DNA of 64,000 nucleotides, taken from contig JAWMAR010000007.1 of the NCBI GenBank assembly GCA_036785375.1, forward strand, positions 11,160,001 through 11,224,000, written 5' to 3'. The position numbers and the translations under genes are program-made. Positions within the stretch are counted from its first letter, which is position 1. Every line of letters begins with the position of its first letter. The DNA is from Leucoraja ocellata. Lineage: Eukaryota. The notes below the pieces were generated by a model that made no database searches, was not told the DNA's origin, and saw nothing but the letters and a program-made list of their open reading frames with translations. Positions 2,703 through 61,108 of this stretch are shown in pieces.

Positions 2703-2780
2703 CAGTCTCCTCCTCTTTGCAGGGAGGTCTTTGAATATGCACAGTACTGTACAGAGTGTTATTCTGATACTCCTGGGGAT
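2703..2780 (-). CDS. Cytoplasmic exon, copy A: DPQEYQNNTLYSTVHIQRPPCKEEET (ITSM TxYxxV)
   Basis: tgtgttcttttcag|AT...ACTG|gtaagg, 78 nt, phase 1/1, open. Confidence 0.75.
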
Positions 2781-14700: not shown

Positions 14701-17700
14701 TGTGGCCCAGTGTTGAACACTATTCAGTACCAATCCTACCTTACCCCGGGATGTTCTGTTGTATTAATCATGCCACATGCTTGCTCAGTAGACTAACAAA
14801 AAGTTTGGCATTTCTCCAACACACTAGCCAATTTCTACAAATGCACCATTGAAAGCAAGACAAAGTGCTGGAGTAATTTAGCAAGTCAGGCAGCATCCCT
14901 GGAGAATGTGGATAGGTGACGTATAGGGTCGGGACCCTTCTTCAGACTGATCGGGATACCGTCAGGATGCTTCACAGCTTGGAAGCAGCTCCCCAAGACT
15001 AAGACATTTCAGAGAGTTGTGAATGTAGTCGAGTATATCACACAGACCACACTTCCCACTATTGACTTCATCTGCACTTCACGCTGCCTTAGGAAAGCAG
15101 TGAACATAATCAAGGATATTTTTCACCTCGGTCATCCCCTATTCTCCCCTCTCCCGTTGGGCAGAAGATACATTAGCTTAAAGACGCAATCCACCAGATT
15201 CAGGAACAGCTTCTTCCCCCACTTTTGCCAGACTACTGAACGGCCCTCCCACAAACTAAGGTGTAGTCCCGATCTTCCAACTTACTTCAATGCGACCCAT
15301 GCATTTTTTCTCTTTTTATCTGAACTTTTTCTGGAGCTGTTACACGGTAATGAAGGAACTATGGATGGCTCAGTGGCACAGCGGTAGAGTTGCTGCCTTA
15401 CTGCACCAGAGACCCGGGTTTGATCCTGACTATGGGAGCCATCTGTATGGAGTTTGTAAGTTCTCCCTGTAACCACTTAGGTTTTCTCCGAGTGCTCTGG
15501 TTTCCTCCCACACACGATAGACATAAGAATTAATGATACAGGGTGCTCGCTGGTCGGCACAGACATGGTGGGCCAAAGGACCTGTTTCCATGCTGTATCT
15601 CTACTAAAGTCTAAAACACAATATTATGTACTCTGGTATTTTTCTCTTTACACTGCCTGTTGTACTTGTATATGGATTGATTGTTCTCATGTATGATATG
15701 ATTAGATTTGACCAAATAACATACAAACAAAGATTTTCACTGTATCACAGTAGAAGTGACTATAATAATAAATTAATACATGAATGCAAGCATTTGTTGC
15801 TGTTGTACAAATCTAAGGACCTAATCAAGAACCTATCAATCTACGCTATAAAATTTCCACTGACTAGACCTCCACTTTTGCCTGTGGCATTGAATTCCAC
15901 TGATTCATCAGTCTCTGGCTAAAAAAAAAAAAATCTTCCTCATCTCCATTCTAAAGGTTCATCCTTTTATTCTGAGTCTGTGTTCTCTGGTTCTGGACTC
16001 TCTCACTGCTGGTAACATTCTCTCCATGCCCACATGTCCTTTTGATAGGTAGCATAGAGACCAAGGACCTATACATTTATACCTGAGTTCATATCTTCTT
16101 GCATTAAAGGCCAACATTACATTTGTTTTCCGAAATCCACACGTTTGATACATAAAGTGAGTTATATGTGAACATTGGTATTCCCCAATCTGTAACCGCT
16201 GGAAGAGCATTGAAGTTTGACAGCTTTTTTTCCTGAAGTGGATTATCTCACATTTTCTCACATTCCCATGTTGTTTCCCAACGTACTTGGCTGGTCGATA
16301 TATTCTCTTCAAACCTTGAGCCATCACATTCCCACTCAGTTTCAAATCATCTGCAAACTGGTCCATGATTGAATCGGAACGCTCAGAACCTTTTTCAAAT
16401 GATACCCAAGCATTTGAAGAACAGCGAGGATCTAAGGACAGAATCACAGCCGGACCTTCCCACAAATTCATCGGAGGGCAAGGGCAATGAATACCTTATC
16501 TCAGGACTGTATTATTAAGAACAGGAAATTCTGACCCTGTTATACCCGTCTATGGACAAGGTCTGTCAGGGTAGCAATGGTGAGGGCAGACTTGACCCTT
16601 CATGGGGTACAGCCCCAGTCCACTAGAACTGAAGATTTAACCTTGGCACACGATGTCTGTGCCGACCATAATGCCAAATTAAACTAATCATATCTCTCTA
16701 CACATGGTTGATCCCTTTCCATTCCATGTATATTTACATGTATAAATGCTCTTTAAACATTGCTAGCGTGTCAGCTTCCACACCTCCCCTGGTTGCACGT
16801 TCCAGGCACCAACCATTCTGAATAAATGGCACTTCTTAAATCTCCGTTAAAAACATTCCTACTCTCACCTTAACCCATGCTCTTTAGTTTTTGACATCTC
16901 AACCCTGGGGAAAAAAGACTAACTACTATTTCTATATGTCTCAGAATTTGACATTCTTTGATCAGCATCAGGTGTTCCAGAGAAAAACAATCCAACCTCT
17001 CCTTATAGCTAAAATCTTCTAATCCAGGCATTATTCTGTAACCCTCTGCACCCTCTCCAAAGTTTCCAAATCCTTCCTGAAATGTGGTCACCAGAACTGG
17101 ACAAAATACTCCAAATGTGGCCTAACCAGGGATGACTGGCCTCCTGTTCACATTTCCGGCCTATAATATTTGAAAAAGCCACCAGTCCCAAGAACACTCA
17201 CAACAGCCCACAATGTAGTTGTTATTGGCAAACTCACATTTTTTCAAAGACATGAGAGCAAATACCATCACAAGGAGAACAACAGCCAATATGGGTAATC
17301 CAATGTAGAGTTCCAGCCACAACCGTCTCCCATCATTGGGTAGGCAGATCTCACGCGTGTCCATCTGGTGTTCATTCACAGCCACACACGTGTAATTCCC
17401 TGGCAGCCTGGGGTGAAGCAGCTTTCCCACAGTCAGTAGTTTCTCTGGATCATGTGTGACTGTCATCTCACTACTGGTCACGGGCAGTGAGCTGTTCCCT
17501 GGGCCGATCCATGTGATGTTTGCAGGAGGCTTCCCTTCAGCCCTGCACACGAGGGTGCGTTCTCCAGCTCCATTGTCGCTCACAACGAACAGCTCCAGGA
17601 TGGTGGCTGGGACTTGGAGAAGGAAGAAATGTATTAAATTCATTGAATTAATCACTGTTGGTGTGCGGATAAACTCCATCTGAATGGGGATTGGAAGGAC

Positions 17701-20700
17701 ACATCTAGGAGACTGCAGTGAAATATTTGCAGATATGATAGTGTCTTTGAGAAGCACATGGATCTACAGGGAATGGAGGGATATGGATCATGTGTCGGCA
17801 GATGATATTAGTTTAACTTACAGAACCATTATATTCTGCACAGATATTGCGGGCCAAAGGGCCTGGTCCTGTGCTGCACTGTTCTATGTAATATTCAGTG
17901 AGAGAACATACAGGATCCCGGAGTCTATGTGAATGAAAGAGACAGTGGAGAGAGGGTTCACTAAGTGGGGGTGGGTGTGATTAAAGACTGTGGACTCTTC
18001 CCGTGGATTCCCCTTCATCCAGCGGACAGTGATGGGGTTGGGATTCTTGTTCAAGGGGCTGAAGCAGCAGGGCAGTGTGGCTGAATCTCTTCTCTTCCCA
18101 ATCACCATCGATGTGTTCTTCTTTCCATCTTGTATAGAGAAAAGTTGTATTTAACAATCTATTCCACATGGTTTATAAAAATACATCATCCATGCCTGTG
18201 ACATTGATTCCCCATCCCACTCCCGCTCTGATCTGTCTGTCTCAGACCTCCTGCATTGTTCTAACGAGGCCCAATCTCAAGCAACCTCATCTTCTGTCTG
18301 GGCAGCATGAAGCTTTTGTGTTAACATTTAATACAACAATTTCAATAACTTGCTTAAGGGCCTGTCCAACTTATGCGATTATTAGGCGACTACTGGCGAC
18401 TAGGCGGTCACCACACGGTTGCCGGGTGTCACATGTAGGGTCGTGAGTCGTCTCCTCAAGTCGCCCAAAGATCCGTAGCGTTTTTCTGGTCGCCGCAGGA
18501 TTTTGAAATGTTCAAATCTTTTTGGCGACACTCAGCGATCTTGGGCTTGTCGTAGCTTGTCTTCTCCTGACGTAGGTGCTGTCGTAAGTTGTCGCCAGGA
18601 TAACATAGGTTGTTGCCAGGATGATGTATGTTGTCGCTGGTGCTGACTTCGATGAATTCATTTGGGGACTACCTACGTCAACCTGCGTAAACCGGCGACA
18701 GCTACCGGCGTCAAGAGAAGTCTTCAATTATCACCGACAGGGTGGTAGCTTGTCGTAGCTTGTCGCGGGTGGAGGTAGGTTGACTGGTTATCGTAGGTTG
18801 TCACCTGTGTGGTCGTAGGGTTGTCTAGGTGTGGTCGTAGGTGGACGTCCTAAGTCGTGACGATTGAGTCGCCGGTTGTCATGGCTTAACGTCGACTAGG
18901 TGGTTGGTTGTTGTAGACGTTGTCGTAGGGGGGGTCCAGTCACCGGTTTTTCACAACCTGCTACGACCATGACAGTCACTGGCAGTTGCCTAAAAAATCA
19001 CCTAAGTGGGACAAGCCCTTTACTGTTAAGTATAAGAACTGGCCAGAACTGCCTCAAAAGTCAATATTACCTGACCTAAACCACCATAGCTAGAGGCTGA
19101 TGACAATATCACTGGAGATGCCACAAGTCTCCCGTCAACACTAACATTGGAGATGAGACAGTGGCGTTCACCTCTGTTCAAACATGAGAAAGTGAAGCCA
19201 ATTGTAAGAGTGCAGTCCACATGTGGCAGCTCAAATATCAAACCCACACATGGGCTGTAGTGTTGCTTATTGACAATGCAAGAGTATCATGAGGAAGACA
19301 GATGAACGTAGAACTGTCGAAAGATACTACAAATGTTGATCTAATACAGATATAGGCAGAGAAATGGCAGATGGAGTTTGATCCGAACATATGTGAAGTG
19401 TTGTCTTTGGGAGGTTGAATGCGTGGAAAATATACAAGGGCAAGACCCTTAATACCACTGATGTACAGAAAAATATTGGGATCCAATTCCATAACTCCCT
19501 GAAAATGGCAACACGTTAAAAACGTGTACAGTTTTCTTGCTTTCATTGGTCAAGGTACTGTATACAAGATGTGTAGGAAGGAACTGCAGATGCTGGTTAA
19601 AACCGAAGATGGACACAAAACGCTGGAGTAACTCAGCGGGACAGGCAGCATCTCTGGAGAGAAAGGATGTGTCACGTTTCAGGTCAAGAAGAAGATACTT
19701 GACCCGAAACATCATCCATTCCTTCTCTCCAGAGATGCTACCTGTCCCGGTGAGTTACTCCAGCTTTTAGTGTCTATCTACTGAATACAAGAGTCAGGAA
19801 GTCATGTTGTAGCTCTATACAACTTTAGTTACGACACTGGGATTATTGCATTCAGTTTTATGTGCAGTTTTCACCCATTACAGGAAGGATGAGGAGACTT
19901 TGGAAAGGGTTCAGAAGAGGTTTAGCAGAATGCTGCCTGGATTAGAGGGTAATAGTTATAATAAAAGGTTGGACATACTTGAACTGTTTTTCTGGACTCT
20001 TGAAAGTTTATAAAAATATGAAAGACATGGATAGGAGAGAGAGTCAGAACCTTTTGCCTACGGCGGGAATGTCAATGAATAGACGGCATTGTGATAAGGA
20101 CAGATGGGAAAAGATGAAAGGAGATATGTGGGGAAAGTTATTGTTTACACAGAGGGTGGTGGGTGCCAGGAAAATACTGTTAGGGGTGATGGAGGCAGCT
20201 ACGATAGTGGAGTTTTAGAGACTTTTTGAAATGCAGGTAATGGAAGAAATGCATCACCTGCAGGTAGACGAGATTAACGTAGCATCATGTTCGGTACAGA
20301 CATTGCGGGCCAAAGGGCCTGTTCCTGTGCTGGTCTACACTGTCAGTGGGAGCTCATTCCTCTTAAGGTTGTGCAATATGATATTATCGTTTACAGCATA
20401 ACATACGTTTCCTTACCCACAACCTGCAGTTTCATCTCATCCTGAGTCACAGTCGTCAACGCTGAACTCCTGATATAAACGTGACAGAAGTAATCACTGG
20501 CGTCATTCAGTTTGAGTCCCTTCACTCTGATGGAGGCGTTTCCCTGCTCCAGATTTCCCACCAGCTCATATCGATTTCCTTTATTTACATTTTTCGGAAT
20601 GTTATTTGCTGCTGGGCGGGGAGAAGTGTCACGAAAGACAACAGACCATTTTGGTGGATTCCTCTTCATCCACTTGATGGTGATGGAGCTGGGATTCCTG

Positions 20701-23700
20701 TTCGAGGGACTGAAGGAGCAGGGCAGTGTGGCAGTCGCACCCTTCCTCCCAATCACCATGGATGCTCTGTCATTATCACCTTGCAGAGAGAAGAGTTTTA
20801 AAGTGTGAATATGATGTAGTAATTGAATACAATAACCACACAGTCTTTATCAATAGTTCATCCATACTTGTGACTTGGATTCTCCATCCCATTCCCACTC
20901 TGATCCACCTGTTCCTGACCTGCACTATTTTATTAAGGGCCAATCTCAAGTAAAGACATCTCAGTTTCAGTCTGGCCAGGATGGAGCCTTGACCTTGAAG
21001 ACTGGGAACCGGAGAGGAGGATGGAGGGTGACTAAAGGCACGGTTAACTGAATTAGGTGGGGTGGGGGGCAGGTCTTAGGTTCTGCACCCGAAGCACTTC
21101 TCATTACCTCTGACATCTGCACTAATCAGGAATCTACTTATCTCTGCCTTAAATATATCCACTGACTTTGCCTCCACAGCCGTCTGTGGCAATGAATTCC
21201 ATAGATTCACCACCCTCCTACCAAAGAAATTCAGCCTCATCTCCTTCCTAAAAGAACGTCCTTTAATTCTGAGGATTAAACCTCTCGTCTTCGACTCTCC
21301 CACAAGTGGAAGCATCCTCTCCACATCCAAGCCTTTCACTATTCTGTCTGTTTCAATGAGGTCCTCCCTCATTCTTCTAAACTCCAGCAAACATAGGCCC
21401 AGTGACGTCAAATATTCATCTGATGATATCCTACTCATTCCTGGGATCATTCTTGTGAACCTCCTCTGGACCCTCTCCAGAGCCAGCACATCCTTCCTCA
21501 GATATGGTGCCTAAAATTGCTCACAATATTCCAAATGTGGCCTGACCAGCGCCTGAAAGATTCTCAGCATTACATCCCTACTTTTGCATATAAACCCTCT
21601 CGAAATAAATGCTAGCATTGCGTTTGCTTTCTGTACAACTGATTTGACTTGCAGATTAACTTTTTGTGAATCCTGCACCAGCATTCTCAAGTCACCTTGC
21701 ACCTCTGATTTCTGGATTCTCTTCCCATTTAGAAAATAATCAACGCCTTTAATCCTATTACCAAAATACATGACTCCACACTTTTCCACACCTTTCCATC
21801 TGCCACTTCTCTGCCCACTCTCCCAACCTATCCAAGTTCTTCTGCAGAGACCCTGCTTTCTCTGCACTACCTGCCTATCCACCTATTTTTGTATAAACCG
21901 CAAACTTGGCCACAAAGCCTTCAATCCCCTCATCCAAATCATTAATATACAACGTGAAGAGCAGCGGCCCCAGCACCGAGCCCTGCGGAACTCTGCTAGT
22001 AACTGGCAGCCAACCTGAAAATGCCTGGTTAACCGAATCAGGAGGGGTGCAAAATGGCAACTGTTGCCCAGACTCAGTGGGTTCTTCTGTACATGATGTA
22101 CTAACCGGGGGGATTGTGCTTATTTATGTACGGTGATATTCTTACTGATCTGTATGCAAAAAAGTATTTCACTGTACTTGCTACATGTGATAATAAAGAA
22201 ACCATTGAACCGAAAATAGACACAAAATGCTGGAGTAATTCAGCGGGCAGGCAGCATGTCTGGATAGAATGAATCGGTGACGTTTCGGGTCGTGATTCTT
22301 CTTCAGGAGAACTGAGTCAGTATCGCAGATGCTGTAGAACTCGCCAGTTCTGATACAAACAGCGAGCAAGTCACCAGAAATTGTTCTATTCACGGTTGAC
22401 CCATTGAACCATTGAGTCAACATTGAATGCAACAATTTCTGGTAACTTTCTCACTGTTTGTATCAGAAGTTCTGCAGCAGGTTATCCATCTGCAATACTG
22501 ACTCAGTTCTCCTCTCTCCACTGACGCTGCCTGATCTGCAGCGTGTTTCTTGCAGCTGACGTGCATTTTGCAGCTCACGTGCATTTTGCAGCTCTGTTTC
22601 TATCTTTGTTTGTGTTCTCTGTCTCCAGTTTCCTTCCTTAATTTATCAACCAGATAATTTCATCAACAGCAAACCTAGACTCACCCTTTCAGAGATATTT
22701 CCTATTTCCAATCCACCCCTCTATACAACCTCTGCAACTTCAGCTAACTTATTTTAAGTTGCAATAATTGTTCTGAGAATAACTGATTAATATTCCATTT
22801 TGCTTATCTTCAGTAGAACTGGTTAGTTCTGATAAAAGAGAGAAAAAGTATCATCCAAAATTCTTGAATTCAATGGAGTCTGCAATGATGCAGAGAGCCC
22901 TGTTCTTCAAATTGCATTAGACGGGTTATAAGGAAGTCACAAAAAATAGTCAGAGGGGGAATTGCATGGATGATTAAGATTACAAGCACCAGAAAGCTCA
23001 GGATTAACCATGTAGAATGAATAAAAGGTTTTCCCTCGTTCCCGCGCCCATCAACTGCATTTATTCCTTGTGAAAGCAGGCAACATAATGAAGGATCACT
23101 CACACCCGAGTTACTCTCTCTTCTCCCCTCCCCCATTACCGGAACCAGAGGCTGACAACAATGTCACTGGAGGTCCCATGATTCTCCCATCAGCACCAGC
23201 AATGGAGATTAGACATGATGTTTATCTATGTTTAACCACTAGAAAGTGAAGCCAATCACAAGAAAGTAGGCTCAACAAATGGCAGCTGAAATGATCAACC
23301 TGTCCATTCTCTCCCGCACACACACGTATCTCCAGATACATTATCACCATCGCTCCAAGATGGTGGCTGAAACCTAGAGAGGGATAAAAGTCACTGTTAT
23401 TCATTGGTGCAGGGGGAGAACCAGGGAGGGGTGAAGATTTGAAAGAGACCCAGCAGGAGAATGGAGTGAAATAGTCAGAGAGGAAACAGAACGAAGCTCA
23501 TTCTTCTCACAGTTGTTCAATGTGATTTTATCATTTACTCCTCAACACTGACTGTTTCCTTACCGAAAACCTGTAGTCCCGTCTCATCCTGAGTCACCTG
23601 ATAATTTTTCTTCTTAGAGGATTCAAAGATCCAAACATGACAGAAATAGTTGTTGGTGTCATTCAACATGAGTCCCCTCACTCTGATGGAGGCGTCTCCA

Positions 23701-26700
23701 TTGTCTACGTTTCCCACCAGCTCATATCGACCTCCTGTATTTACATTGTCAGTGCCGGGACCACTTGTGGCCTAGGAGCGGGTATGTTTAAAGACAACGG
23801 ACTCTTCCCATGGAGTCCCCTTCATCCAGAGGATAGTGATCACTCTGCTATTTGCACTCGAGTGTTTGAAGTTGCAGTTCAGTGTGGCACCACCTCCTCT
23901 CTTCCCGATCACCATAGATGTACCTCTACTACATTTTCTACTGCATGTTCTACTACATGGTGATTTTCCATCGAATTATAAGAAGATTGCAGATGGAATA
24001 TGAAGAGGTGGAGAAGGTGTGTGAGATTAACAGAGACACGCACCGAGTGATAATACCTACACAGAAATGAGAGATAAGATAGTTAAACAGAACAATGCTC
24101 AAGGGTGCCAAGGAACATGTGGAAAACTCCTTCTGAGACACAGTTAACTAAATCAAATGTGACACATTGAGGCAATGGTTAGTGAGGTGCGAGACGCTGG
24201 GCTCAATGATGAAAGTATGAAGTACAAGATTACGATAGCTACATTGCCATAGAAAAAATCAGGAGAGAAACAAATGATTGTCAGTTTGATGATCAGAACT
24301 GGGAAAAGTTACAATAAAACAAATGTCTTTTATGTTGCAGAGAAGTGGGAATGTGGAGGAATCTATGATAGGTTGGGGACAGGATTGCCCTGGTGATTGG
24401 CTGTTGTGGTCACTTGATTGGTAAGTGAATGAGAGTAAATATTGAGGTCAGCCAATATAACAGTATCACACGGCTTGATCTCTTGTTGCTACTGCCAGGT
24501 AGAAGGTTCAGGAAATGTGAACCTTTACCTCCAGGTTCAAGAAGACAATCTTGCCATTTAACAGGTTGTTTTGATTTCACTAAAGATCTCCCTCCCGAAC
24601 TGTGATTCAGCAATCCCGTTATTTGTCCATAACAGGTCAGTGCTGAAGTTTGGTTGTGTTTAGGTTCATTGTGGCATCATCAGGCTCTTGCACCAAACTA
24701 TTATGCACTTTGTATAAGGTTGCTTTAAATACTTCAAATGTTAATCAAATGCTATTGCCATGTATAACTGATATTGTATTATTGTTTGTTGTTAATGTAT
24801 TATTATGTTGCATCAATGTGCCTGCAAAGTTGCAGCAATGAATAATTGTGTTGTTCTAATCCCAGTGCATATGACTATTAAACACACCTGACTGGAATAA
24901 TATGGGGATTGTGTGGAAAGAATAGGGGGACTGGGACTGATGGATGTCAATGGACAGAGGGCTCTGGGGAATAGATGGATTTCACAAATACTTGTGGAAA
25001 GTTTATTTCCTCCTGCTTATGATTCAAAAACCACATGTCAGGGAAAAATAAGTCAGACATTCAGGACTGAGGTCAAGAAATTCCCTGCAATAATGTTTGT
25101 GAACCTACTGAATTTTCCATCCCAGAGTTTAGTTTATTGTCACCTGCACCAAGGTACAGTGAAAAGCTTTTATTGCATGCTAACCAGTCAACGAAAAGAC
25201 AATACATGATTACAATCAACAATCCACATTATGCAGAAGCTGTGGGTAAAACGTAGTTGAGTAAGTTCAAACCAAAGGTCCACAGTTTTTCTGGGTCTCA
25301 TGGAGATCACTGTCTGGGGATCTCTCAGTGAATGAACAAGGTCCAGAATTAGCCATGATTTTATGGATGAGAGTTGGTTCGAGCATCTGTGTTCTGACTC
25401 CTCCCATTTCACGTAATAGTCTAAGCATTGTTTTAAAAACCAGGGACTATCCCTTCCTGTTCACTAACACTGCCTGAACAAATGCTGTCTCTCCAATCTG
25501 CCAGGGTCAATTTTGATTCTCCATTTCACCATTCTACACTTAATGCTGCTTCGGAAAAGCAACCACATTATCAAGGACAACTAATACCCTGACATTCTCA
25601 CACCCAGAAAATACAAAAGCTTGAAAGTAGGTACCACCAGATGGAAGAACAACTTCTTACCTATTGTTAGAGTCTTGAATGGACCTCACAAATGGTAGGG
25701 TTGAATTACCCGATCTTCCAATCTACCACGTTAAACGCTTGCACTACTCTTTAGTAGCACTTTCACTGTAGCTGTCATACTACATTCTTCACTTTGCTTA
25801 TTTTCTCTTTTACAGTTCCTGATGCACACATCTAAGGTATGATTCTTCCAACCTCATCTATTGCATTCTGTGTCCCCAATATGATGAATACTTGTGTTCA
25901 GTCTGCGAAGGCCTGCTGGAGCTCCTGGTTCCGACGCTTTTTAACTCCTCTTTCTGTTCCCACACTGACCTGACTGTCACTGGCCTTGTGTATTATCAGT
26001 GTGAGAACACACACAAACAGGAAGAACAGCACCTCATGGTCAGCTTGTGTAACTTATAACCTAACCGTATGAACACTGAACTCTCAAAGTTCAAGTAATA
26101 CCTCCCTCCCCGCCCCCTCCACCAGCCCACTGTATACACATTGCTCCCATTATCCCTGTCACACTGCTCCTTTCATCTCCCGTATTCATCTCCCGTCCTC
26201 GAATCCCATAGTTCCTTCTATCACGTCTTTCACCTGCCCATCTCCCCTGGCCCATTCCATCCATTTGCCTCCGCCTTTACATTTTGTTTCCTTGTCTGAC
26301 AACTTTTACCACTTTTCACCACTCGCCATTATCACTGTCTCCACCCATCTGATAAGCATCTCCCCCGTGCCCCCCCCTCCCCCACCTCCATCCACCTCTC
26401 ATTGGGCAAGCTTTGCTCCGTTCCCATCTTTCTCCCTACTACTCCATCAGTTTGAAGGGAACCGACCCGGATAATTGCCTGTCCATTTCCTCCACCAATG
26501 CTGCTTGACCCACTGTGTCTTCAGCACTTTGTGTATTGCTCATGGTTCCAGCATCTGCAGTTTCTAGTGTCTCAATGGGATGATTTGTCTGGATGGCACT
26601 CGGAAAAATATCACTGTATCTCAGTGCAATAGACAATAATAAACCAATACCAATATCTGAAACTTAACTGGAGGAGATATAATATGTGACTATAACAGCA

Positions 26701-29700
26701 GGCCAGATGTGGCAATGACATCACCCCATTCCACAGTGACTGGACATCATGGTCAAGGCAGAAATGAGGAGTATGAGTGAAGATGGTTATCAAAAACTAC
26801 AGCAGGATCGTGATCAGCGGGGCAAGTGGGTTGAGGGTTGGTTAATAGATTTAAATTCAGTTTAGTGCAACGTGATGTATTTTAGACAGTCAAACCAGGG
26901 CATGATCTCCCAGTGATGTAGCCAACAAGTCCGCAGCTTGAACAATTGCCAGCCATGCCAGTAACATTGGAATCACAGGAAGCAGGAAGGAAGACAAATT
27001 GTTTGTTTGCAGCACAATCATTCCTCACCTGATGCTGTGATTCGCCCATGTGGGCATTCATACTGTGCTCCTGCTTGCCCCGTGAGCTCAACACGACAGT
27101 AGAGGGTCTTGATTGTATCCGTCGTTCTCAGCTGATTAATGATTATGGAAGCATTGTTCTTCCGAGGGTCCCCCATTGGTCTGTAGCGAGCTCCTACATT
27201 ATACACAATCTTATTTTTATACTTGCCGCTCGATAGATCATTTTTGTATTTGAAAAGGGTATTCTGGGTCTTCTCCTTCTCCTCTTTCCAGATGATGTTG
27301 ATGTTGCCTTTGTATTCATGGTGAGGGTGAGTGAACTTGCAGTACAGAACCACGAGCTTCCCCTCCCTCCCCATCACCTTGTCCGGTGTCTCCATGGACC
27401 AACCTTTGCTATTGCAGCCTGTGAAGACACAGAGATGTAACGTTAAGACTGAACTGAGGGCCACAGTCACTGTCGGAGGATGCGCCCACCCTGGGTCCCT
27501 GCCCTTGTGGAAGACAGTTGAACTGCGATGCTGCTGTTCTGTTTGTCACCGTCACTATGTGGTGAGCTGTGAGAAATGGGGAGGTGGGACTGTGACACTA
27601 ACAGTGGTTTTCCTCCTCCGGGCTGTGCCGGCTCTTCACTAGAGCCACATCTCTCACAGCTATAAGCTGCTGTCCGGGAGAAACCTTGCATTTACATCAC
27701 TTCCCTCACAGACAGGGGGTGGTCCACAGAGCTTCACAGGTTTGAAGTGTTGGCGGTGAAGTAGCGTTGGGAATGCCACAGGCAAGTAGTGCACAGCAAG
27801 ATCCCACCAAGGAAGTACCTGACCGCTAATCGAGGATGTACACAGCTGGCACAGTGGAGCAGCTAGTGGAGCTGCTAACTCACAACTCTAGGGACTCAGA
27901 GTTTAATCCTGACCTCAGATGCTGTGTACAGTTTGCACTTTCCATCTATAACTGCATGGGTTTCTCTTCCTTAGTTTGTTTCCCACATCTCAAAGATAGA
28001 AACATAGAGACATAGAAAATAGGTGCAGGAGGAGGCCATTTGGCCCTTCGAGCCAGCACCGCCATTCATTGTGATCATGGCTGATCGTCCCCAATCAATA
28101 ACCCGTGCGAGCCTTCTCCCCATATCCCTTGACCCCACTAGCCCCTGGAGCTCTATCTAACTCTCACTTAAATCCATCCAGTAATTTGGCCTCCACTGCC
28201 CTCTGTGGCAGGGAATTCCACAAATTCACAACTCTTTGGGTGAAAAGATTTTTTCTCACCTCAGACCTTAAATGGCCTCCCCTTTATTCTAAGACTGTGG
28301 CCCCTGGTTCTGGACACGCCCAACATTGGGAACAATTTTCCTGCATCTAGCTTGTTCAGTCCTTTTATAATTTTATATGTTTCTATAAGATCCCCCTCAT
28401 CCTTCTAAACTCCAGTCTAGTCTTTTCAATCTATCCTCATATGACAGTCCCACCATCCCAGGGATCAATCTCGTGAACCTATGCTGCACTGCCTCAATCA
28501 CAAGAACGTCCTTCCTCAAATTAGGAGACCAAAACTGTACACAATACTGCAGATGTGGTCTTACCAGGGCCCTCTACAACTGCAGAAGAACCTATTTACT
28601 CCGATACTGAAATCCTCTTGTTATGAAGCCTAACATTCCATTAGCTTTCTTCACTGCCTGCTGTACCTGTAAGCCAACTTTCAGTGACTGGTGTACAAGG
28701 CCACCCAGGTCTTGCTGCACCTCCCCCTTACATAACCTAACCCAATTGAGATAATAATCTACCCCCTTGTTTTTGCCGCCAAAGTGGATAACCTCACATT
28801 TATCTATATTACACTGCATCTGCCACTCATCTGCCCACTCACTCAACCTGTCCAGGTCACCCTGCAACCTCCTAACATCATCTTCACAGTTCACACTGCC
28901 ACCCAGCTTTGTTTCATCTGCAAGCTTGCTAGTGTAGCTCCTAATTCCCCCTTCCAAATCATTAATATATATGGTAAATAGTTGCGGCCCCAACACCAAG
29001 CCTTGCGGCACTCCACTCGCCACTGCCTGCCATTCTGAAAAGGACCCGTTCACTCCTACTCTTTGCTTCCTGTTTACCAATCAATTTTCTATTCATGTCA
29101 ACACCCTACCCCCAATACCATGTGCTCTAATTTTAGTAACCAGTGTCCCATGCGGGACCTTATCAAAGGCTATCTGAAAGTCTAGACACACTGCATCCAC
29201 TGGCTCCCCTTCATCCATTTTACTTGTCACATCCTCAAAAAATTCCAGAAGATTAGTCAAGCATGATTTCCTTTTCATAAATCCATGTTGACTTGGACTA
29301 ATCCTTTTACTGCTATCCAAATGCCCCATTATTACCTCTTTAATAATTGACTCCAGCATCTTTCTCACCACCGAAGTCAGGCTAACTGGTCTGCAATTCC
29401 CTGTTTTCTCTCTTGCTTCTTTCTTGAAAAATGGGATAACATTAGCAATCCTCCAATCCACAGGAACTGATCCTGAATCTATTGAACATTGGAAAATGAT
29501 CACCAATGCGTCCACTATTTTTAGAGCCACCTCCCTGAGGACCCTGGGATGCAGACCATCAGGCCCAGGGGATTTATCAACCTTCAGTCCCATTAGCCTA
29601 CCCAATACTATTTCTAACCTAATAAAATGTTCTTTCAGTTCCTTTACCCCCTTAGATCCTCTGTCCTCCAGTACATCTGGGAGATTGTTGGTGTCTTCCT

Positions 29701-31842
29701 TAGTGAAGACAGATCCGAAGAACCAACTTTTCTGCCATTTCCTTGTCCCCATTATAATTTTACCCGTGTCTGCATTCAAGGGTAAATTTGACTTTGCTAC
29801 TCTTTTTCCCATAACATATCTAAAGAAGCTTTTACTGTCCTTCCTTATATTCCTGGCCAGCTGCCCCTCATACTTCATCTTTTCAGCCCGTATTGCCCGT
29901 TTTGTTTCCATCTGTTGTCCTATGAAAGTTTCCCAATCCTCTGGCTTCCAACTACGCTTTGCTGTGTTATACATATTTTCGTTTAGTTTTATTCTATCCC
30001 AAACTTCTCTTGTCACCCACGGTTGCCTCCTACTTAGAATCTTTCTTCCTTTTTGGAATGAAATGATCCTGCATCTTCCGGATTATGCGCAGAAATTCCT
30101 GCCATTCCTGGTCCATCGTCATTTCTGTTAGGATCCCTTTCCAGTCTACCTTGGCCTGCTCCTCTCTCATGCCTTCATAGTCCCCTTTGTTCAACTGCAT
30201 CACTGACACTTTAACCTTCTCCTTCTCAAATTGATGCGCATCGTTAATTAACAGACTTCTCTAAGTTGCCCTCAGTGTTTTTCGGTCAGTGGTAGAAACT
30301 GGGGCTGGGGAGCCATGGATTGATTTTTGAGCTGAATTACTGCTCAATTCTTGTGATATTCTAGTTGCTGTGCTAATCCACGAGAATTCTGGTTACTGCT
30401 CCAATGCTCAGGACATTTTAATTACTGCACTAATTTTCGTGACTTTCTCGTTTCTGCTCTAAATTCTAGGGGCATTGGACCAGTTCTGCAGCAGGAAAGA
30501 CCTCTCCAAGATCAATGGGTTGCACCTCAGCCACACTGGGACAGTGTCGTAGTAGGGAGATTTATTGGTGCACGAAGAAGTGTTTGAGCCAAACAGACAA
30601 AGTAATGGATCAGTATCTATTACTAGCGTGTGGCAAGAGAAAAGAGAAATAAGGTGCACCAAGATTGGGAGTGGCAGATAGTACGAAAATAGTAAATATG
30701 TGAGTGAGCCTGGTTATTCATAGGTAGAAATATCTATATGGAAAAATGATGCAGAGTTGGGGCAGAACCAGACATTTAATGGTTCTGGCTACAAGGTGTT
30801 GATAATGGAGAGGGAAGGGACATTTTAGATGGGCCGGTAATACTGATTGAGGAAAATTAGTATTGGTTTATTATTTTCATGTATACTGAGATAGGCGAAA
30901 ACTTATTTTGTGTGTTATCCGGCTAAATCGTACCATTCATGATTACAGCACTTAGTGCATTAGAGAAAACAAATAGAGTAAAGAATATAGCGTTGCACCT
31001 ACAGAGGAAGTGTCGTTTAATAAAAATGTTTGTGGCCACAACAAGGTATATTGGAAGATTGGGGATTCATTTTTCGCATATGAGATGTTATTTTGAGAAA
31101 GGTATTATCCCAGGTGCAGGTGTTCACTGTACCTCAATACATGTGACAATAATAAACCAAAACAAATTTGATTAGGATCAGAATCAACAATGAGCGCAAA
31201 GACATTCAGAGCAACACAGGAAGCCATTCGGCTCTTCAAGCCTGGTCAACAGTCAATATGATTATGGCTCTTAATTGCTAATCAATACAGAATTGAACTT
31301 TGTCCCCATTCCCCTTGATTTCTTTAGCCTGGGAATATATTCAGCTCCTTGCTGAAGACAAGAGGTGGCTTGGCTTGAACTACTTTCAATTTGATAATTC
31401 TATAGGTGCATTATTCTCAGTGAAGATATTTCTCACCATCTTCACTTTTAAACTATGCCAAGGACACAACGCCCTTCACCCACTCTCAAGGGCTAATATC
31501 TTCATCCAGAAGTGTGGGGTCGACAACTAAACACAATCTCCCCAGCTGCTCTGACTCCAGCCTTATAATCTCAAACCGATCATTTACTGTATTGTAAAAT
31601 GTTTGTATTAAAGGTCTTCACACACATACATATTCCCTTTCTGGAAGACTGCCTGTCACCTTAAGTACAGCATCAAAAGACTGACCCTGCTCTGTTTCCA
31701 CGGACACACATGTCTATCTCATATAGTTAATCATTTCACTCACAGTGAAACAGCCAGAAAAGCAACTTCTGCTCCTTATTAAAGGATACTTACGATTAGC
31801 GGTGACAGGCAGTGCAAAGGCACAAAGCAAAATGAACAGCAT
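2703..31842 (-). CDS. Siglec-15-like Ig-superfamily receptor, multi-exon, 3'-incomplete. Predicted exons: 31794-31842, 27029-27418, 20417-20779, 17238-17612, 13206-13277, 11804-11920, 8088-8147, 7452-7526, 5169-5246, 3935-4012, 2703-2780
   Basis: All listed exons have GT donors, and internal exons have AG acceptors, phase 1/1 and lengths divisible by 3. Joined they give ~1735 nt (~578 aa) open. V1 (WSM..P..V...EG...L.C.FTHPH..Y.G....IW...RYR..GDPRKNNASI.I..L...D....YCRVEL.G....YE..HG) and the fused C2+TM exon match the Siglec-15 pattern as I recall it. Orthology is not established. Confidence 0.8.
3935..4012 (-). CDS. Cytoplasmic exon, copy B: DPQESQNNNLYSNLPIQRPPCKEEET
   Basis: Same splice sites, 78 nt, open. 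Confidence 0.7.
5169..5246 (-). CDS. Cytoplasmic exon, copy C: DPQEYQNNTLYGTVHIQRPPCKEEET (ITSM)
   Basis: Same splice sites, 78 nt, open. Confidence 0.7.
5475..6513 (+). mobile_element. Non-autonomous DNA transposon (MITE), copy 1, 7-bp TSD CTCTATG
   Basis: Ends TAGGTATGTTGCAAAA / TTTTGTAACATTGCTA. Absent from sister tandem units, which show the empty site. Confidence 0.92.
7452..7526 (-). CDS. Cytoplasmic exon, copy D: DPQESQNNTLYSNLHIQRPPCKEET
   Basis: Same splice sites, 75 nt (in-frame 3-nt deletion), open. Confidence 0.72.
8088..8147 (-). CDS. ITIM exon DALIYSIVHIQSRSRVGVEI via an internal acceptor; original acceptor stranded at 8715-8716 by the L2 insertion
   Basis: actctccag|ATGCCCTCATTTACAGCATTGTT...ATAG|gtaagg, 60 nt, phase 1/1; paralogous to the repeated exon (Y..VHIQ). 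Confidence 0.6.
8156..8712 (-). mobile_element. 5'-truncated L2-clade LINE with (TTA)n tail
   Basis: REHITPILASLHWLPV.FR...KI..FVFK.LNGLAP.YL...GDRAFSVAAP.LWN.LP..IR......FKS.LKTH.Y..AF. Confidence 0.9.
9476..10032 (+). mobile_element. CR1 LINE 3' fragment
   Basis: MRGDLIETYKILKGLD...RTRGHSL...FFTQRVVNLWNSLP followed by the CR1 3' UTR. Confidence 0.9.
11804..11920 (-). CDS. Cytoplasmic exon GSQEPEGDPIYSVVNLNTETRNRAATQAVPTPRELDRNV (ITIM-like PIYSVV)
   Basis: ttttttgtgtctttggcag|GT...GTTG|gtgagt, 117 nt, phase 1/1. Confidence 0.8.
13206..13277 (-). CDS. First cytoplasmic exon CSQQRVCCVDARMANGRKPQGPEP
   Basis: ctttcctttgtctttgacag|GT...CCAG|gtaata, 72 nt, phase 1/1; acceptor region resembles that of 11920. 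Confidence 0.7.
13820..14275 (+). mobile_element. GC-rich non-coding interspersed repeat (related 3' tails at ~10380-10560, ~33060-33945, ~48540-52075)
   Basis: Shared tail ttgccttcca(t/c)cacagtga...tggatg...tgacaataaa. Confidence 0.55.
14382..14712. repeat. Minisatellite, 20-bp unit TGTGTCCCAGTGGGCCTCCC, ~16 copies
   Basis: Directly visible; explains the repetitive ORFs in several frames. Confidence 0.97.
15365..15610 (+). mobile_element. tRNA-derived SINE (related copies at ~11318-11690, ~27848-27990, ~39690-39980 minus, ~63560-63820 minus)
   Basis: A-box-like tggcacagcggt and B-box-like ggtttgatcct, with CR1-like tail gggccaaaggacctgtttccatgctgtatct. Confidence 0.7.
17238..17612 (-). CDS. 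C2-set Ig domain + transmembrane exon (VPATILEL...LVCRAEGKPPANITW...GNYTCVAVNEH...LWLELYIGLPILAVVLLVMVFALMSLKK)
   Basis: cttccttctccaag|TC...AAAT|gtgagt, 375 nt; C-W-C Ig core then a hydrophobic helix ending in KK. Confidence 0.92.
17884..18128 (-). pseudogene. Truncated V-domain exon copy (N-terminal half only)
   Basis: Good acceptor, then DGKKNTSMVIGKRRDSATLPCCFSP...VRWMKGNP...VFNHT. Homology then stops: no F-strand Cys, no phase-1 donor, and a stop at 17884. Flanking introns match those of 20417-20779. Confidence 0.75.
18357..19019. mobile_element. PIF/Harbinger-type MITE, TTA TSD
   Basis: TIRs AGGGCCTGTCCAACTTATGCGATT / AATCACCTAAGTGGGACAAGCCCT flanked by TTA on both sides; interior rich in gtcgtagg motifs. 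Confidence 0.85.
20417..20779 (-). CDS. Intact second V-set Ig exon (YFCHV)
   Basis: ctctctgcaag|GT...GTGG|gtaagg, 363 nt; ATLPC, W, RYELVGN..QGNASI, D...YFC motifs. Confidence 0.88.
21095..22030 (-). mobile_element. CR1 LINE RT/3' fragment
   Basis: VPQGSVLGPLLFTLYINDL, LVRPHLEYC, VQRRFTRMIPG motifs with frameshifts. Confidence 0.9.
22305..22513. repeat. ~210-bp imperfect inverted repeat (hairpin)
   Basis: aggagaactgagtcagtatcgcagatg pairs with catctgcaatactgactcagttctcct; ttctgatacaaacag pairs with ctgtttgtatcagaa. Confidence 0.85.
23290..23373 (-). pseudogene. Decayed 5' part of a C2 exon copy
   Basis: TCAGCCACCATCTTGGAG (SATILE) matches CCAGCCACCATCCTGGAG (PATILE) of the 17612 exon, then deletion/frameshift; lies ~190 bp after the 23564 V exon. 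Confidence 0.6.
23564..23935 (-). pseudogene. Full-length but disabled V-domain exon (YFCHV type)
   Basis: SMVIGKRGGGATLNCNF...ILWMKGTPW...KHTRS*ATSG...RYELVGNVDNGDASI...YFCHV...LQVF|gtaagg. In-frame TAG at 23772-23774; no AG at the homologous acceptor position. Confidence 0.85.
27029..27418 (-). CDS. N-terminal Siglec-15-like V-set exon with conserved Arg (YCRVE)
   Basis: gtgtcttcacag|GC...TCAG|gtgagg, 390 nt, open. Confidence 0.92.
27995..30230 (-). mobile_element. CR1 LINE, 5'-truncated, degenerate ORF2
   Basis: KSPGPDGLHPRVLRE, QHGFMKRKSCLTNL, AFDKVPH, VPQGLVLGP motifs; (tttctatg)-type tail. Confidence 0.92.
31794..31842 (-). CDS. Signal-peptide exon MLFILLCAFALPVTAN
   Basis: ATG, hydrophobic core, phase-1 donor C|gtaagt that is in frame with the V1 exon. 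Confidence 0.7.
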
Positions 31843-60267: not shown

Positions 60268-61108
60268 TAAGGAGATGGTTGTCGACTTCAGGAGGGCGCA
60301 GCCAAAGCATACACCCCTCAACATCAGTGGCACTGCAGTGGAGAGAGTGGAGAGCATAAAGTTCCTCGGTGTGCAAATTACAGACAGCCTCACCTGGTCC
60401 AGGAACACCACTGGGACCGTCAAACGGGCCCATCAGCGCCTGCACTTCCTGAGGAAACTAAAACAGGCCTCACTCCCCACCAACATCCTCAGGACTTTCT
60501 ACAGGGGTACGGTGGAGTCTGTACTCATGTACTGCATAAATACGTGGTACTGCACCTGCAACTGCTCGGACAGGAAGGCTCTGCAGAGGGTAGTGAGGGG
60601 AGCAGAGAGGATCATTGGCATCTCCCTACCCTCGGTACAAGAACTGTTCCAGAGCCGCTGTCTGAAAAAAGCTCAGAGAATTGCTAAGGACAAACTGCAC
60701 CCCCTCCACATACACCTGGATCTCCTGCCATCAGGCAAGAGGTACCGAAGCATCAAAGCCCGGACTACAAGACTGCTAAACAGTTTCCTACCACAGGCTG
60801 TGAGGCTGCTAAACAGTCACTCTGTACTCACAGTCACTTGATTCTGCGGCTGGCACGGCCACTTTAATAACTGGCACTGGCCACTCAAATCAGCTGCCCC
60901 GGACATTTTTATGATTGGTTTATTGTATTTTAACATTGTGTTTTACCTGCTTTTAACTATTTATACTGTTCCATCAGGGACTGGATTGTTTTTAGTGTTA
61001 TTATGTGTGAAATGTTTTAAATTTCATGTGCGATGCTCCGCTATTCACTGGGAAACGTCTTTTCATTTTGCACTGTACAACTGTTGCTTGCAAGATGACA
61101 ATGAAAGG

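What the first reader, a model, noticed from the sequence alone, without database searches (positions are those of the whole stretch)
17238..31842. Siglec-15-like receptor rewired as an inhibitory, multi-V-domain protein
Seen: V1 has the Siglec-15-type pattern (WSM, CKFTHPH, GDPRKNNAS, YCRVE, YE.HG), and C2 and TM share one exon. The TM (LYIGLPILAVVLLVMVFALMSL) has no Lys/Arg, an extra V domain is present, and the tail is long and rich in Tyr motifs. Known: mammalian Siglec-15 is V+C2 with a TM lysine that pairs with DAP12 and a short tail. Inference: this is a lineage-specific paralogue, possibly the inhibitory member of an undescribed paired-receptor family in cartilaginous fish.
Basis: partly seen in the sequence, partly recalled or inferred. 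Interest (0 to 1): 0.8.

Follow-up and report, generated by a model that had tools for sequence, protein, structure and literature searches.

The report
Inhibitory Siglec-15-like receptor gene in a skate
This is a skate gene for a cell-surface receptor whose outer tip closely resembles the sugar-binding tip of Siglec-15, but it carries extra domains and a tail built to switch immune cells off, and it belongs to a little-studied on/off receptor family found across sharks, rays and chimaeras.

Summary
A phase-1 gene lies on the minus strand. It has a signal exon (ATG at 31842) and a V1 exon (27418-27029) that is Siglec-15-type by sequence and fold and keeps the essential Arg. One exon (17612-17238) encodes both C2 and an uncharged TM.

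There are three extra Arg-less V exons, not one. V3 is intact, V2 has an in-frame TAG, and V4 has lost its 3' half.

The Tyr-rich tail lies outside the stated span, at 13.3-2.7 kb. It matches the ITIM/ITSM tails of RefSeq models from Leucoraja, Rhinoraja and Mobula in exon order.

Chondrichthyans have linked genes of two types. The activating type has a TM Lys and a tail of 4-51 residues (most 11-19). The inhibitory type has no TM Lys and carries ITIM cassettes. This window holds an inhibitory-type copy.

Unexpectedly, the activating type has lost the Arg in 9 of 10 elasmobranch models.

Two caveats apply. This copy may be decaying. The only RNA-like evidence comes from a copy 96-97% identical, not from this copy itself.

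My searches found no paper on the family, only automatic RefSeq models. I rate it a new variant of a known kind, of moderate interest.

The parts
31794..31842 (-). Exon 1: start codon and signal peptide MLFILLCAFALPVTAN, ending in phase 1 (donor GTAAGT at 31793-88)
   Evidence: Sequence. The same N-terminus is joined to V1 in skate RefSeq models P0176, P0174 and P0004 (identities 15/16 and 14/16).
27029..27418 (-). V1 exon (390 nt, phase 1-1): Siglec-15-type V-set domain that keeps the F-strand Arg (LYCRVE)
   Evidence: Splice sites. Pfam V-set E 7.3e-7. 7ZOZ E 1.6e-16 with YCRVE aligned to YFCRVE. Model pLDDT 94.1, 7ZOZ TM 0.86/0.89. The Arg is invariant in 29 of 29 aligned V1-type sequences.
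28595..30082 (-). LINE reverse-transcriptase fragments inside intron 1 (not part of the gene product)
   Evidence: Pfam RVT_1 E 1.8e-10 and 1e-10.
23564..23923 (-). V2: Arg-less V-set exon (CHV), 360 nt, carrying an in-frame TAG at 23774-23772. The only in-phase acceptor AG (23925-24) follows a purine-rich tract. Probably a dead exon in this copy.
   Evidence: P0173, P0005 and P0176 have Tyr where the window has the stop. Identity to P0173 V2 is 107/115.
20417..20779 (-). V3: intact Arg-less V-set exon (363 nt, phase 1-1; DYFCHVYI)
   Evidence: acceptor AG 20781-80, donor G|GTAAGG. Pfam V-set E 2.3e-14. Clade with Amblyraja V3 domains 100/99*. Contig record 16 of run X4 ends this exon exactly at 20417 and joins it to 18128.
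17941..18128 (-). V4 relic: the 5' half of an Arg-less V exon with a good acceptor. The homology stops after ..VNPLSTV at 17941/17940 and the frame runs into a stop at 17886-17884. There is no donor.
   Evidence: 58/62 identical to P0173 V4, then nothing. Contigs X2 record 9 and X4 record 16 leave the window at this same base.
17238..17612 (-). C2-set domain plus transmembrane segment in one exon (375 nt, phase 1-1). The TM LYIGLPILAVVLLVMVFALMSL has no Lys or Arg and is followed by KK.
   Evidence: Pfam Ig_3/I-set/C2-set_2. A single colinear HSP with P0178, P0162, P0009, P0001 and P0002.
13206..13277 (-). Cytoplasmic exon A (72 nt, phase 1-1): (C)SQQRVCCVDARMANGRKPQGPEP
   Evidence: 21/23 identical to P0173, and homologous to Mobula P0006 and Rhinoraja P0174.
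11804..11920 (-). Cytoplasmic exon B (117 nt, phase 1-1): (G)SQEPEGDPIYSVVNLNTETRNRAATQAVPTPRELDRNV. The Tyr motif is ITIM-like, with Pro at position -2.
   Evidence: 38/38 identical to P0173.
8088..8147 (-). [not shown]
   Evidence: 19/19 identical to the C-terminus of P0173.
2703..7526 (-). Four B cassettes with perfect AG..GTAAG sites, all phase 1-1: 7526-7452 (TLYSNL), 5246-5169 (TLYGTV), 4012-3935 (NLYSNL) and 2780-2703 (TLYSTV). They are ITSM or ITSM-like. Between them lie three A-type copies (about 7076, 4792 and 3559) that lack an in-frame acceptor.
   Evidence: Homologous to the DPQE..LYS.V cassettes of P0174, P0009 and P0006.

Best explanation
The locus is one copy of a tandem cluster of inhibitory receptors derived from Siglec-15, in a skate. 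By protein identity it is nearest to Leucoraja erinacea and Amblyraja radiata models.

Shown: all exons are phase 1-1 cassettes. They are a signal peptide, a Siglec-15-type V1 that keeps the sialic-acid Arg, Arg-less V-set spacer exons, a C2 domain fused to an uncharged TM, and a tail of small cassettes. The tail holds one canonical ITIM (LIYSIV), one ITIM-like motif (PIYSVV) and ITSM-type motifs (TLYSTV, TLYGTV, TLYSNL).

Inferred: in this copy V2 (nonsense codon) and V4 (3' half lost) are skipped. The product would then be SP-V1-V3-C2-TM-tail. V1 would bind sialylated ligands. Src-family kinases would phosphorylate the tail tyrosines, which would recruit SHP-1/SHP-2 and dampen activation. 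This would be the opposite sign to the DAP12-coupled gene with a TM Lys that RefSeq calls Siglec-15 in the same animals. The number of spacer V domains (1 to 3 in relatives) varies by exon birth and death.
For: V1 is Siglec-15-type.

Exon boundaries and phases.

The same domain order is joined in RefSeq models of relatives. P0173 (Leucoraja) is V1-V2-V3-V4-C2-TM-tail. P0174 (Rhinoraja) is SP-V1-V-C2-TM-tail with PVYSVV, LIYSIV, SLYSNV and CIYATV. P0009 and P0177 (Heptranchias), P0006 (Mobula) and P0115 (Callorhinchus) follow the same plan.

The tail exons are colinear with those of P0006 and P0173. No other signal, TM or Ig exon lies between 31.8 kb and 2.7 kb.

The activating counterparts have the TM motif IPLxKFLLLL.

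Run X4 behaves like RNA. Its exon contigs have depth 64-79 against 2-10 for unique intron bins. One contig joins 20417 directly to 18128, which are the predicted V3 donor and V4 acceptor.
Against: No RNA evidence exists for this exact copy. The spliced X4 contig differs from the window at 14 of 361 and 6 of 188 bases, and it continues with an intact V4 that the window lacks. It therefore comes from an allele or a paralogue.

No RNA run was on record as holding the stretch.

V2 carries a stop, and V4 has an acceptor but no donor, so many transcripts could be unproductive.

No protein identical to these exons was found in the libraries. The best V1 match is 83%, which would fit a gene that is unannotated or annotated as a pseudogene.

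ITIM function, sialic-acid binding and the splicing of the tail are all inferred from homology.
Confidence: 0.6

Rival explanations
1. This copy is a decaying or dead member of an otherwise functional cluster. The nonsense codon in V2 and the truncated V4 would make most transcripts unproductive, and the function would be carried by the neighbouring four-V paralogues.
For: TAG at 23774-23772 where three skate models have Tyr. V4 has lost its 3' half and its donor. Contigs with an intact V4 exist in the same species label. Three of the four LIYSIV copies lack an acceptor. No identical protein is in the databases. Unchecked scan notes place four-V paralogues 79 kb before and 105 kb beyond the window.
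Against: The signal, V1, V3, C2-TM, tail A, tail B, A1 and four B exons are all open, with consensus splice sites. Every exon is phase 1-1, so skipping V2 and V4 keeps the frame. Relatives with one or two Arg-less V domains exist (P0174, P0177). The tail exons are 100% identical to P0173.
Confidence: 0.3
2. It is the direct orthologue of vertebrate Siglec-15, and it changed its TM and tail in this lineage.
For: V1 is closest to Siglec-15. NCBI names one Amblyraja fragment of this type 'Siglec-15' (P0007).
Against: Skates have a separate gene with the Siglec-15 hallmarks of a TM Lys and a 12-residue tail (P0162, P0163). Its V1 falls in a different clade: the batoid activating clade at 100/99*, against the skate inhibitory clade at 96/90*.
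Confidence: 0.04
3. V1 and the C2-TM exon belong to different genes, or the tail exons belong to a downstream gene, so the architecture is an artefact of reading neighbouring genes together.
For: Tandem paralogues do produce chimeric automatic models: Amblyraja P0004 and Mobula P0006.
Against: Between the signal exon and 2.7 kb there is only one signal exon, one V1 and one TM exon. The order SP-V1-V..-C2-TM-tail is the same in models of at least 6 species. The phases all match.
Confidence: 0.05

Closest known systems
Mammalian Siglec-15 (structure 7ZOZ)
   Same: The V-set domain matches in sequence (E 1.6e-16) and in fold (TM 0.86/0.89), including the essential F-strand Arg (R143 in human). 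A C2-set domain follows (passages of PMC13711574 and PMC6941304).
   Different: Human Siglec-15 has two Ig domains, a TM Lys274 that pairs with DAP12, a short tail, separate but adjacent C2 and TM exons, and two coding exons before the V exon (passages of PMC6941304 and PMC13711574). Here there are one to three extra Arg-less V exons, no TM Lys, C2 and TM in one exon, one upstream coding exon, and a long ITIM/ITSM tail.
Leucoraja erinacea LOC129695366 isoform X3 (P0173) and Rhinoraja longicauda LOC144611565 (P0174), both automatic RefSeq models named 'uncharacterized protein'
   Same: The exon order is the same. Identity to P0173 is V2 107/115, V3 109/120, V4 relic 58/62, C2 79/90, tail exons 21/23, 38/38 and 19/19. 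The TM is uncharged and the tail cassettes are the same.
   Different: V1 is only 91/119 identical, the most divergent domain. P0173 has all four V domains intact, whereas the window copy has a stop in V2 and a truncated V4.
Elasmobranch genes that RefSeq names 'Siglec-15' (for example Leucoraja P0162, Rhinoraja P0163, Pristis P0161, Mobula hypostoma P0013)
   Same: They share the V1 - Arg-less V - C2 ectodomain plan. Against the window, C2 is 66/90 and the Arg-less V is 73/120 identical. In Leucoraja, Rhinoraja, Pristis, Heptranchias, Hemitrygon, Mustelus and Callorhinchus they lie on a scaffold of the same length as the other family models (in Mustelus only an uncharacterized relative, P0038).
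   Different: They have a TM Lys (IPLxKFLLLL) and a tail of 4-16 residues. The F-strand Arg is replaced by Leu in 9 of 10 elasmobranch models; Mustelus keeps it. V1 is 54/105 identical to the window.
Primate paired Siglecs (Siglec-5/14 and Siglec-11/16)
   Same: These are pairs of related ectodomains with opposite signalling: an ITIM tail against a charged TM that couples to DAP12 (search listing and abstract starts of PMC4042635 and PMC5701461; passage of PMC13711574).
   Different: They belong to the CD33-related lineage, their ectodomains are nearly identical through gene conversion, and they have C2 spacers. Here the lineage is Siglec-15, the spacers are V-set domains, and the ectodomains are divergent in skates. 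Only in Callorhinchus are the two V1 domains near-identical (100/100*).
Teleost 'siglec15l' (Conger conger P0041) and salamander 'Siglec-12' models (P0014, P0017)
   Same: They have a Siglec-15-type V with the Arg and tails bearing ITIM motifs. Conger has IIYADI and VCYAEV with an uncharged TM. Pleurodeles has SEYANI and VTYAVV.
   Different: They have no Arg-less V spacer. The salamander models have two Arg-bearing V domains. Their relation to the chondrichthyan clade is unresolved because the tree backbone is open.

Membership tests
Siglec family | N-terminal V-set domain of Siglec type | tested here: met
   7ZOZ E 1.6e-16, then CD33, Siglec-10 and Siglec-5. Fold match to 7ZOZ at TM 0.86/0.89. 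Separated from CD22-like V domains but inside the Siglec-15 group.
Siglec family | Conserved F-strand Arg that forms a salt bridge with sialic acid | tested here: met
   YCRVE aligns with YFCRVE of 7ZOZ. The Arg is invariant in 29 of 29 aligned V1-type sequences. Its role as R143 comes from a passage of PMC13711574.
Siglec family | Binding of sialylated glycans | not testable with these tools
   This needs V1-Fc on a glycan array, with an Arg-to-Ala control.
Siglec-15 orthologue group | Ectodomain of one V-set and one C2-set domain | tested here: not met
   At least one intact extra V exon (V3) and two damaged ones lie between V1 and C2.
Siglec-15 orthologue group | Lys in the transmembrane segment (the DAP12 partner) | tested here: not met
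   The TM LYIGLPILAVVLLVMVFALMSL has no Lys or Arg. The type with a TM Lys is a different gene in skates.
Siglec-15 orthologue group | Short cytoplasmic tail without an ITIM | tested here: not met
   Seven or more downstream phase-1 tail exons carry LIYSIV and TLYSTV motifs.
Siglec-15 orthologue group | Conserved synteny with the SIGLEC15 locus | tested here: inconclusive
   The rest of the window holds only transposon ORFs: LINE EEP/RT, Gypsy integrase and RT.
ITIM-bearing inhibitory immunoreceptors | Uncharged TM plus a cytoplasmic (S/I/V/L)xYxx(I/V/L) motif | tested here: met
   The LIYSIV exon 8147-8088 has consensus splice sites. It is present as expressed sequence in the RefSeq model P0173, 19/19 identical. 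Its splicing in this copy is inferred. The ITIM and ITSM consensus patterns are recalled knowledge.
ITIM-bearing inhibitory immunoreceptors | Recruitment of SHP-1/SHP-2 after phosphorylation | not testable with these tools
   The mechanism for ITIM Siglecs is stated in a passage of PMC13711574. It needs a pull-down or a reporter assay.
Paired activating/inhibitory receptors | A related gene in the same genome with a charged TM and a short tail | tested here: inconclusive
   None lies in this window. One is present in the closest annotated skates (P0162, P0163) and in 8 further elasmobranch species plus Callorhinchus. A scan note on a candidate activating Siglec elsewhere in this genome was not checked.
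Paired activating/inhibitory receptors | Nearly identical ligand-binding domains in the two partners | tested here: not met
   In skates V1 is 54/105 identical between the window and P0162, and the two lie in separate clades. The feature is met only in Callorhinchus (100/100*).

The most novel reading that the evidence does not exclude
In elasmobranchs the Siglec-15 lineage is an old two-sided system with an unusual division of labour. The single DAP12-type activating gene has given up the sialic-acid Arg (Leu in 9 of 10 species models). A multicopy inhibitory cluster keeps the Arg. That cluster diversifies V1 faster than any other domain, and it changes receptor length by birth and death of Arg-less V-set spacer exons that themselves derive from the Siglec-15 V. 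This would be a second, independent invention of Siglec paired receptors, about 400 million years older than the primate ones. The window would be a snapshot of exon turnover in it.
Probability: 0.35. Interest if true: 0.7.

Novelty: new variant of a known kind. Interest (0 to 1): 0.55.

Why it matters
Siglec-15 is treated as the conserved, single, activating Siglec of vertebrates, and it is a drug target in bone disease and cancer. If cartilaginous fishes carry a whole inhibitory gene cluster built on the same sugar-binding domain, alongside an activating partner that has lost the sugar-binding Arg, three things follow.

- The ancestral role of the Siglec-15 domain may have been inhibitory or dual.
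- Paired Siglec signalling would have arisen more than once.
- V-set domains would be able to serve as spacers where other Siglecs use C2 domains.

The idea can be tested directly, because RefSeq models for both partners exist in at least ten species.

Tried and rejected

The C2-TM exon alone does not identify the family. Its best PDB hits are titin and RPTPs, and 7ZOZ scores only E 0.019. In the word-indexed library it found just two fragments.

V3 alone looks like a generic V-set, with antibody light chains on top. Only a profile of 8 Arg-less V domains put Siglec-15 first among single-domain matches: 50.1 bits, against about 26 bits per domain for CD276. I therefore rejected RefSeq's 'CD276 homolog' and 'CXADR-like' names for relatives as descriptions of origin.

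The RNA search found no run on record as RNA. The one read-laying run gave contigs only. It could not show whether the V2 stop is fixed, because 290 differences were not listed.

Synteny could not be tested.

The sigma-70 promoter and terminator scan has no bearing on a vertebrate gene.

The TIYTGL and LQYGSV motif hits lie in long repeat-unit ORFs without cassette splice sites, and I did not count them as tail motifs.

The C-termini of P0001 and P0005 match intronic repeat sequence (19208-19068 and 16469-16398). I did not use them as TM or tail evidence.

Literature searches for Siglec-15 or Siglec with cartilaginous fish, shark, elephant shark, little skate or siglec15l found no description of this family. 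The review PMC9905256 is not held. I did not read Angata 2007; I saw it only in reference lists. Supplements were not opened. Supplementary file 9 of PMC8455134 and Supplementary Table 7 and Figure 10 of the bioRxiv CD24 paper might list fish Siglecs.
Full report
**What is there.** The feature is a gene on the minus strand. Stop-to-stop frames and the DNA give these exons:
- a signal-peptide exon, 31842-31794 (MLFILLCAFALPVTAN);
- V1, 27418-27029;
- three further V-set exons: V2 23923-23564, V3 20779-20417 and V4 18128-17941;
- one exon holding both the C2-set domain and the transmembrane segment, 17612-17238;
- small cytoplasmic exons at 13277-13206, 11920-11804, 8147-8088, 7526-7452, 5246-5169, 4012-3935 and 2780-2703.

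Every exon starts and ends in phase 1, so any cassette can be skipped without breaking the frame. The introns hold LINE reverse-transcriptase fragments and other repeats.

**V1 is a Siglec-15 domain.** Pfam sees a V-set domain. Against all PDB sequences the best hit is human Siglec-15 (7ZOZ, E 1.6e-16), followed by CD33 (1.5e-7), Siglec-10 and Siglec-5. In that alignment YCRVE lies on YFCRVE. Passages of PMC13711574 state that R143 of human Siglec-15 is the conserved Arg essential for sialic-acid binding. In an alignment of 29 V1-type sequences this Arg is invariant. An AlphaFold model built from that alignment has pLDDT 94.1. Its best structural match is 7ZOZ at TM 0.86/0.89, and the next fold reaches only TM 0.65. 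A phmmer scan of 1.84 billion representatives gave 111 hits at E <= 1e-3 and 36 at E <= 1e-10.

**The extra V exons.** V2, V3 and V4 are V-set domains with CHV in place of CRV, so they lack the Arg. Only V3 is intact.
- V2 has an in-frame TAG at 23774-23772, where the skate models P0173, P0005 and P0176 have Tyr. Its only in-phase acceptor follows a purine-rich tract.
- V4 has a good acceptor and matches P0173 at 58 of 62 residues. The homology stops after ..VNPLSTV at 17941/17940, and the frame runs into a stop at 17886-17884. No 3' half is found anywhere in the window.

A profile of 8 Arg-less V domains from 7 species and the window finds Siglec-15 as the best single-domain PDB match (50.1 bits, E 2.4e-12). 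CD276 scores 56 bits, but only as the sum of two domains of about 26 bits each. In a tree of 64 V domains the Arg-less domains form a chondrichthyan clade (14 rows, 98/98*; 17 rows, 99/96*) inside the Siglec-15 group. That group is split from CD22-like and Siglec-8-like V domains at 99/98*. I infer that the spacers are old duplicates of the Siglec-15 V itself. The backbone of the tree is unresolved, so this is not proven.

**TM and tail.** The TM core is exactly as quoted and has no basic residue. Its exons follow the same order as the tail of the Mobula birostris model P0006. Against the Leucoraja model P0173 they are 21/23, 38/38 and 19/19 identical. They encode:
- PIYSVV, which is ITIM-like because position -2 is Pro;
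- one canonical ITIM, LIYSIV (8147-8088);
- four DPQE..LYS.. cassettes, of which TLYGTV and TLYSTV fit TxYxx(V/I), TLYSNL is close, and NLYSNL does not fit.

Three more LIYSIV copies in the 1233-bp repeat units lack an in-frame acceptor. The terminal exon (CIYATV.. in Rhinoraja P0174) was not found in the window. An unchecked scan note places an ITIM-like exon 1.9 kb before the window start.

**Relatives.** The nearest proteins are automatic RefSeq models from skates:
- Leucoraja erinacea LOC129695366 X3 (P0173, 694 aa: V1-V2-V3-V4-C2-TM-tail);
- Amblyraja radiata LOC116971578, LOC116971577, LOC116971575 and a fragment named Siglec-15;
- Rhinoraja longicauda LOC144611565.

Against P0173 the window gene is 76% identical in V1 (91/119) but 88-100% identical elsewhere. 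V1 is therefore the fastest-diverging part.

The same inhibitory architecture is modelled in Heptranchias (named 'Siglec-12'), Pristis, Mobula, Hemitrygon, Narcine and Callorhinchus LOC103188797, which has VIYSVV and VIYAVV.

A second type has the same V1 - Arg-less V - C2 ectodomain but a TM with Lys (IPLxKFLLLL) and a tail of 4 to 16 residues. It is modelled, mostly under the name Siglec-15, in Leucoraja, Rhinoraja, Pristis, Hypanus, Hemitrygon, Mobula hypostoma, Heptranchias, Heterodontus, Mustelus, Cetorhinus, Chiloscyllium, Rhincodon, Scyliorhinus torazame and Callorhinchus. In Leucoraja, Rhinoraja, Pristis, Heptranchias, Hemitrygon and Callorhinchus both types lie on scaffolds of the same length. 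In Mustelus the activating model shares its scaffold length only with an uncharacterized relative. This points to linkage on one chromosome, at unknown distance.

Passages of PMC6941304 and PMC13711574 give the mammalian reference state: two Ig domains, Lys274 pairing with DAP12, a short tail, and a TM exon adjacent to but separate from the C2 exon.

**An unexpected pattern.** I aligned the F strand of 28 V1 domains from 25 models.
- In the activating type, the Arg is Leu in 9 of 10 elasmobranch models (Mustelus keeps Arg). In Callorhinchus one model has Trp and the other has Arg.
- In the inhibitory type, the Arg is kept in the window and in Leucoraja, Rhinoraja, Heptranchias, Pristis and Callorhinchus. 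It is Gln in Mobula birostris and Hemitrygon.

In a 31-row V1 tree, chondrichthyan V1 domains are monophyletic against bony-vertebrate Siglec-15 (100/97*). The batoid activating V1 domains form one clade (100/99*), and the skate inhibitory V1 domains, including the window, form another (96/90*). The Callorhinchus activating and inhibitory V1 domains sit together (100/100*). The backbone is open. The two types therefore separated before the batoids radiated. Whether they separated before sharks and rays split is not resolved.

**Expression evidence.** No run is on record as RNA. In the single read-laying run (17931-23930), run X4 behaves like RNA. Contigs on V2, V3 and V4 have depths of 64-79, against 2-10 in unique intron bins. 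One 573-nt contig joins 20777..20417 directly to 18128..17941, which are my predicted V3 donor and V4 acceptor.

That contig differs from the window at 14 of 361 and 6 of 188 bases, and it runs on for 24 bases unlike the window. A genomic contig of run X2 (98% identical over 17941-18463) also leaves the window at 17941 and continues into an intact V4 3' half. These contigs therefore prove splicing and expression of a very close copy with an intact V4, not of this copy. Unchecked scan notes describe four-V Siglec-15-like genes 79 kb before and 105 kb beyond the window. Those are plausible sources.

**Interpretation.** The family assignment is secure: this is an inhibitory-type member of a chondrichthyan family derived from Siglec-15. 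Whether this copy is functional is open. I put 0.6 on a working receptor made by skipping V2 and V4 (SP-V1-V3-C2-TM-ITIM/ITSM tail), for three reasons:
- all the other exons are open, with consensus splice sites;
- all phases match;
- relatives with one or two spacer domains exist.

I put 0.3 on a decaying copy. The mechanism is inferred from the ITIM Siglecs (passage of PMC13711574) and was not tested: Arg-dependent sialoglycan binding by V1, then tyrosine phosphorylation, then SHP-1/2 recruitment.

**Novelty.** Six searches of the paper library found no description of Siglec-15-like inhibitory or paired receptors in cartilaginous fishes. The terms were Siglec-15 with cartilaginous fish; Siglec, shark and paired receptor; Siglec, Callorhinchus, elephant shark and Chondrichthyes; Siglec with shark; siglec15l; and Siglec with little skate. 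The whale shark genome paper mentions Siglecs only in a list (one passage of PMC8455134). A bioRxiv paper treats zebrafish siglec15l only as a candidate (passages). Subscription papers and supplements were not visible.

The genes themselves are in RefSeq as automatic models under inconsistent names: 'uncharacterized', 'Siglec-12', 'Siglec-15', 'CD276 homolog' and 'CXADR-like'. ITIM-tailed Siglec-15-like models also exist in an eel and in salamanders. I therefore rate this a new variant of a known kind, of moderate interest. Most of that interest lies in the reciprocal Arg pattern and the V-set spacer turnover.

Noticed in passing
related proteins P0162, P0163, P0161, P0160, P0013, P0165, P0167, P0168, P0170: The elasmobranch genes with a TM Lys that RefSeq names Siglec-15 have Leu in place of the essential sialic-acid Arg in 9 of 10 species models. 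Most inhibitory paralogues keep the Arg.
   Followed up: partly
window 17931-23930, runs X1, X2 and X4: Contigs under the same species label are about 1% different from the window in unique intron stretches but about 4% different over the V3 exon (15 of 360). This means either cross-mapping paralogues or unusually polymorphic V exons.
   Followed up: no
window 14382-14712: A 20-bp tandem array (16.6 copies, 95% matches) lies in the intron between the C2-TM exon and the first tail exon. It produces a spurious repetitive ORF, 14282-14719 on the minus strand, with no Pfam hit.
   Followed up: partly
window 34096-36854 (+), 42884-44881 (-), 55175-55879 (-): The region upstream of the gene is transposon-rich. 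It holds a LINE with a GDSL-esterase ORF followed by an endonuclease/RT ORF, a Gypsy-type integrase ORF and another RT fragment. No host gene usable for synteny was seen.
   Followed up: partly
window 60275-60838 (+): An ORF matches Pfam ALKBH8_N (E 2.6e-15). It may be part of a repeat rather than a host gene.
   Followed up: no
related proteins P0004 (Amblyraja XP_032874700.1) and P0006 (Mobula birostris XP_072113536.1): These RefSeq models are chimeras of two tandem family genes. In P0004, V-V-C2 runs into the next gene's 5' UTR, signal peptide and V1. P0006 contains two full ectodomains and two TM segments.
   Followed up: partly
window 19068-19208 and 16398-16469 (minus strand): The C-terminal residues of the RefSeq models P0001 (Pristis) and P0005 (Amblyraja) match intronic repeat sequence here (62% and 100%). 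Those model ends are probably mis-spliced into transposons.
   Followed up: partly
related protein P0003 (Protopterus annectens XP_043935463.1): A lungfish model has seven tandem Arg-bearing Siglec-15-type V domains before C2 and TM. This is a different route to a long Siglec-15-like ectodomain.
   Followed up: no
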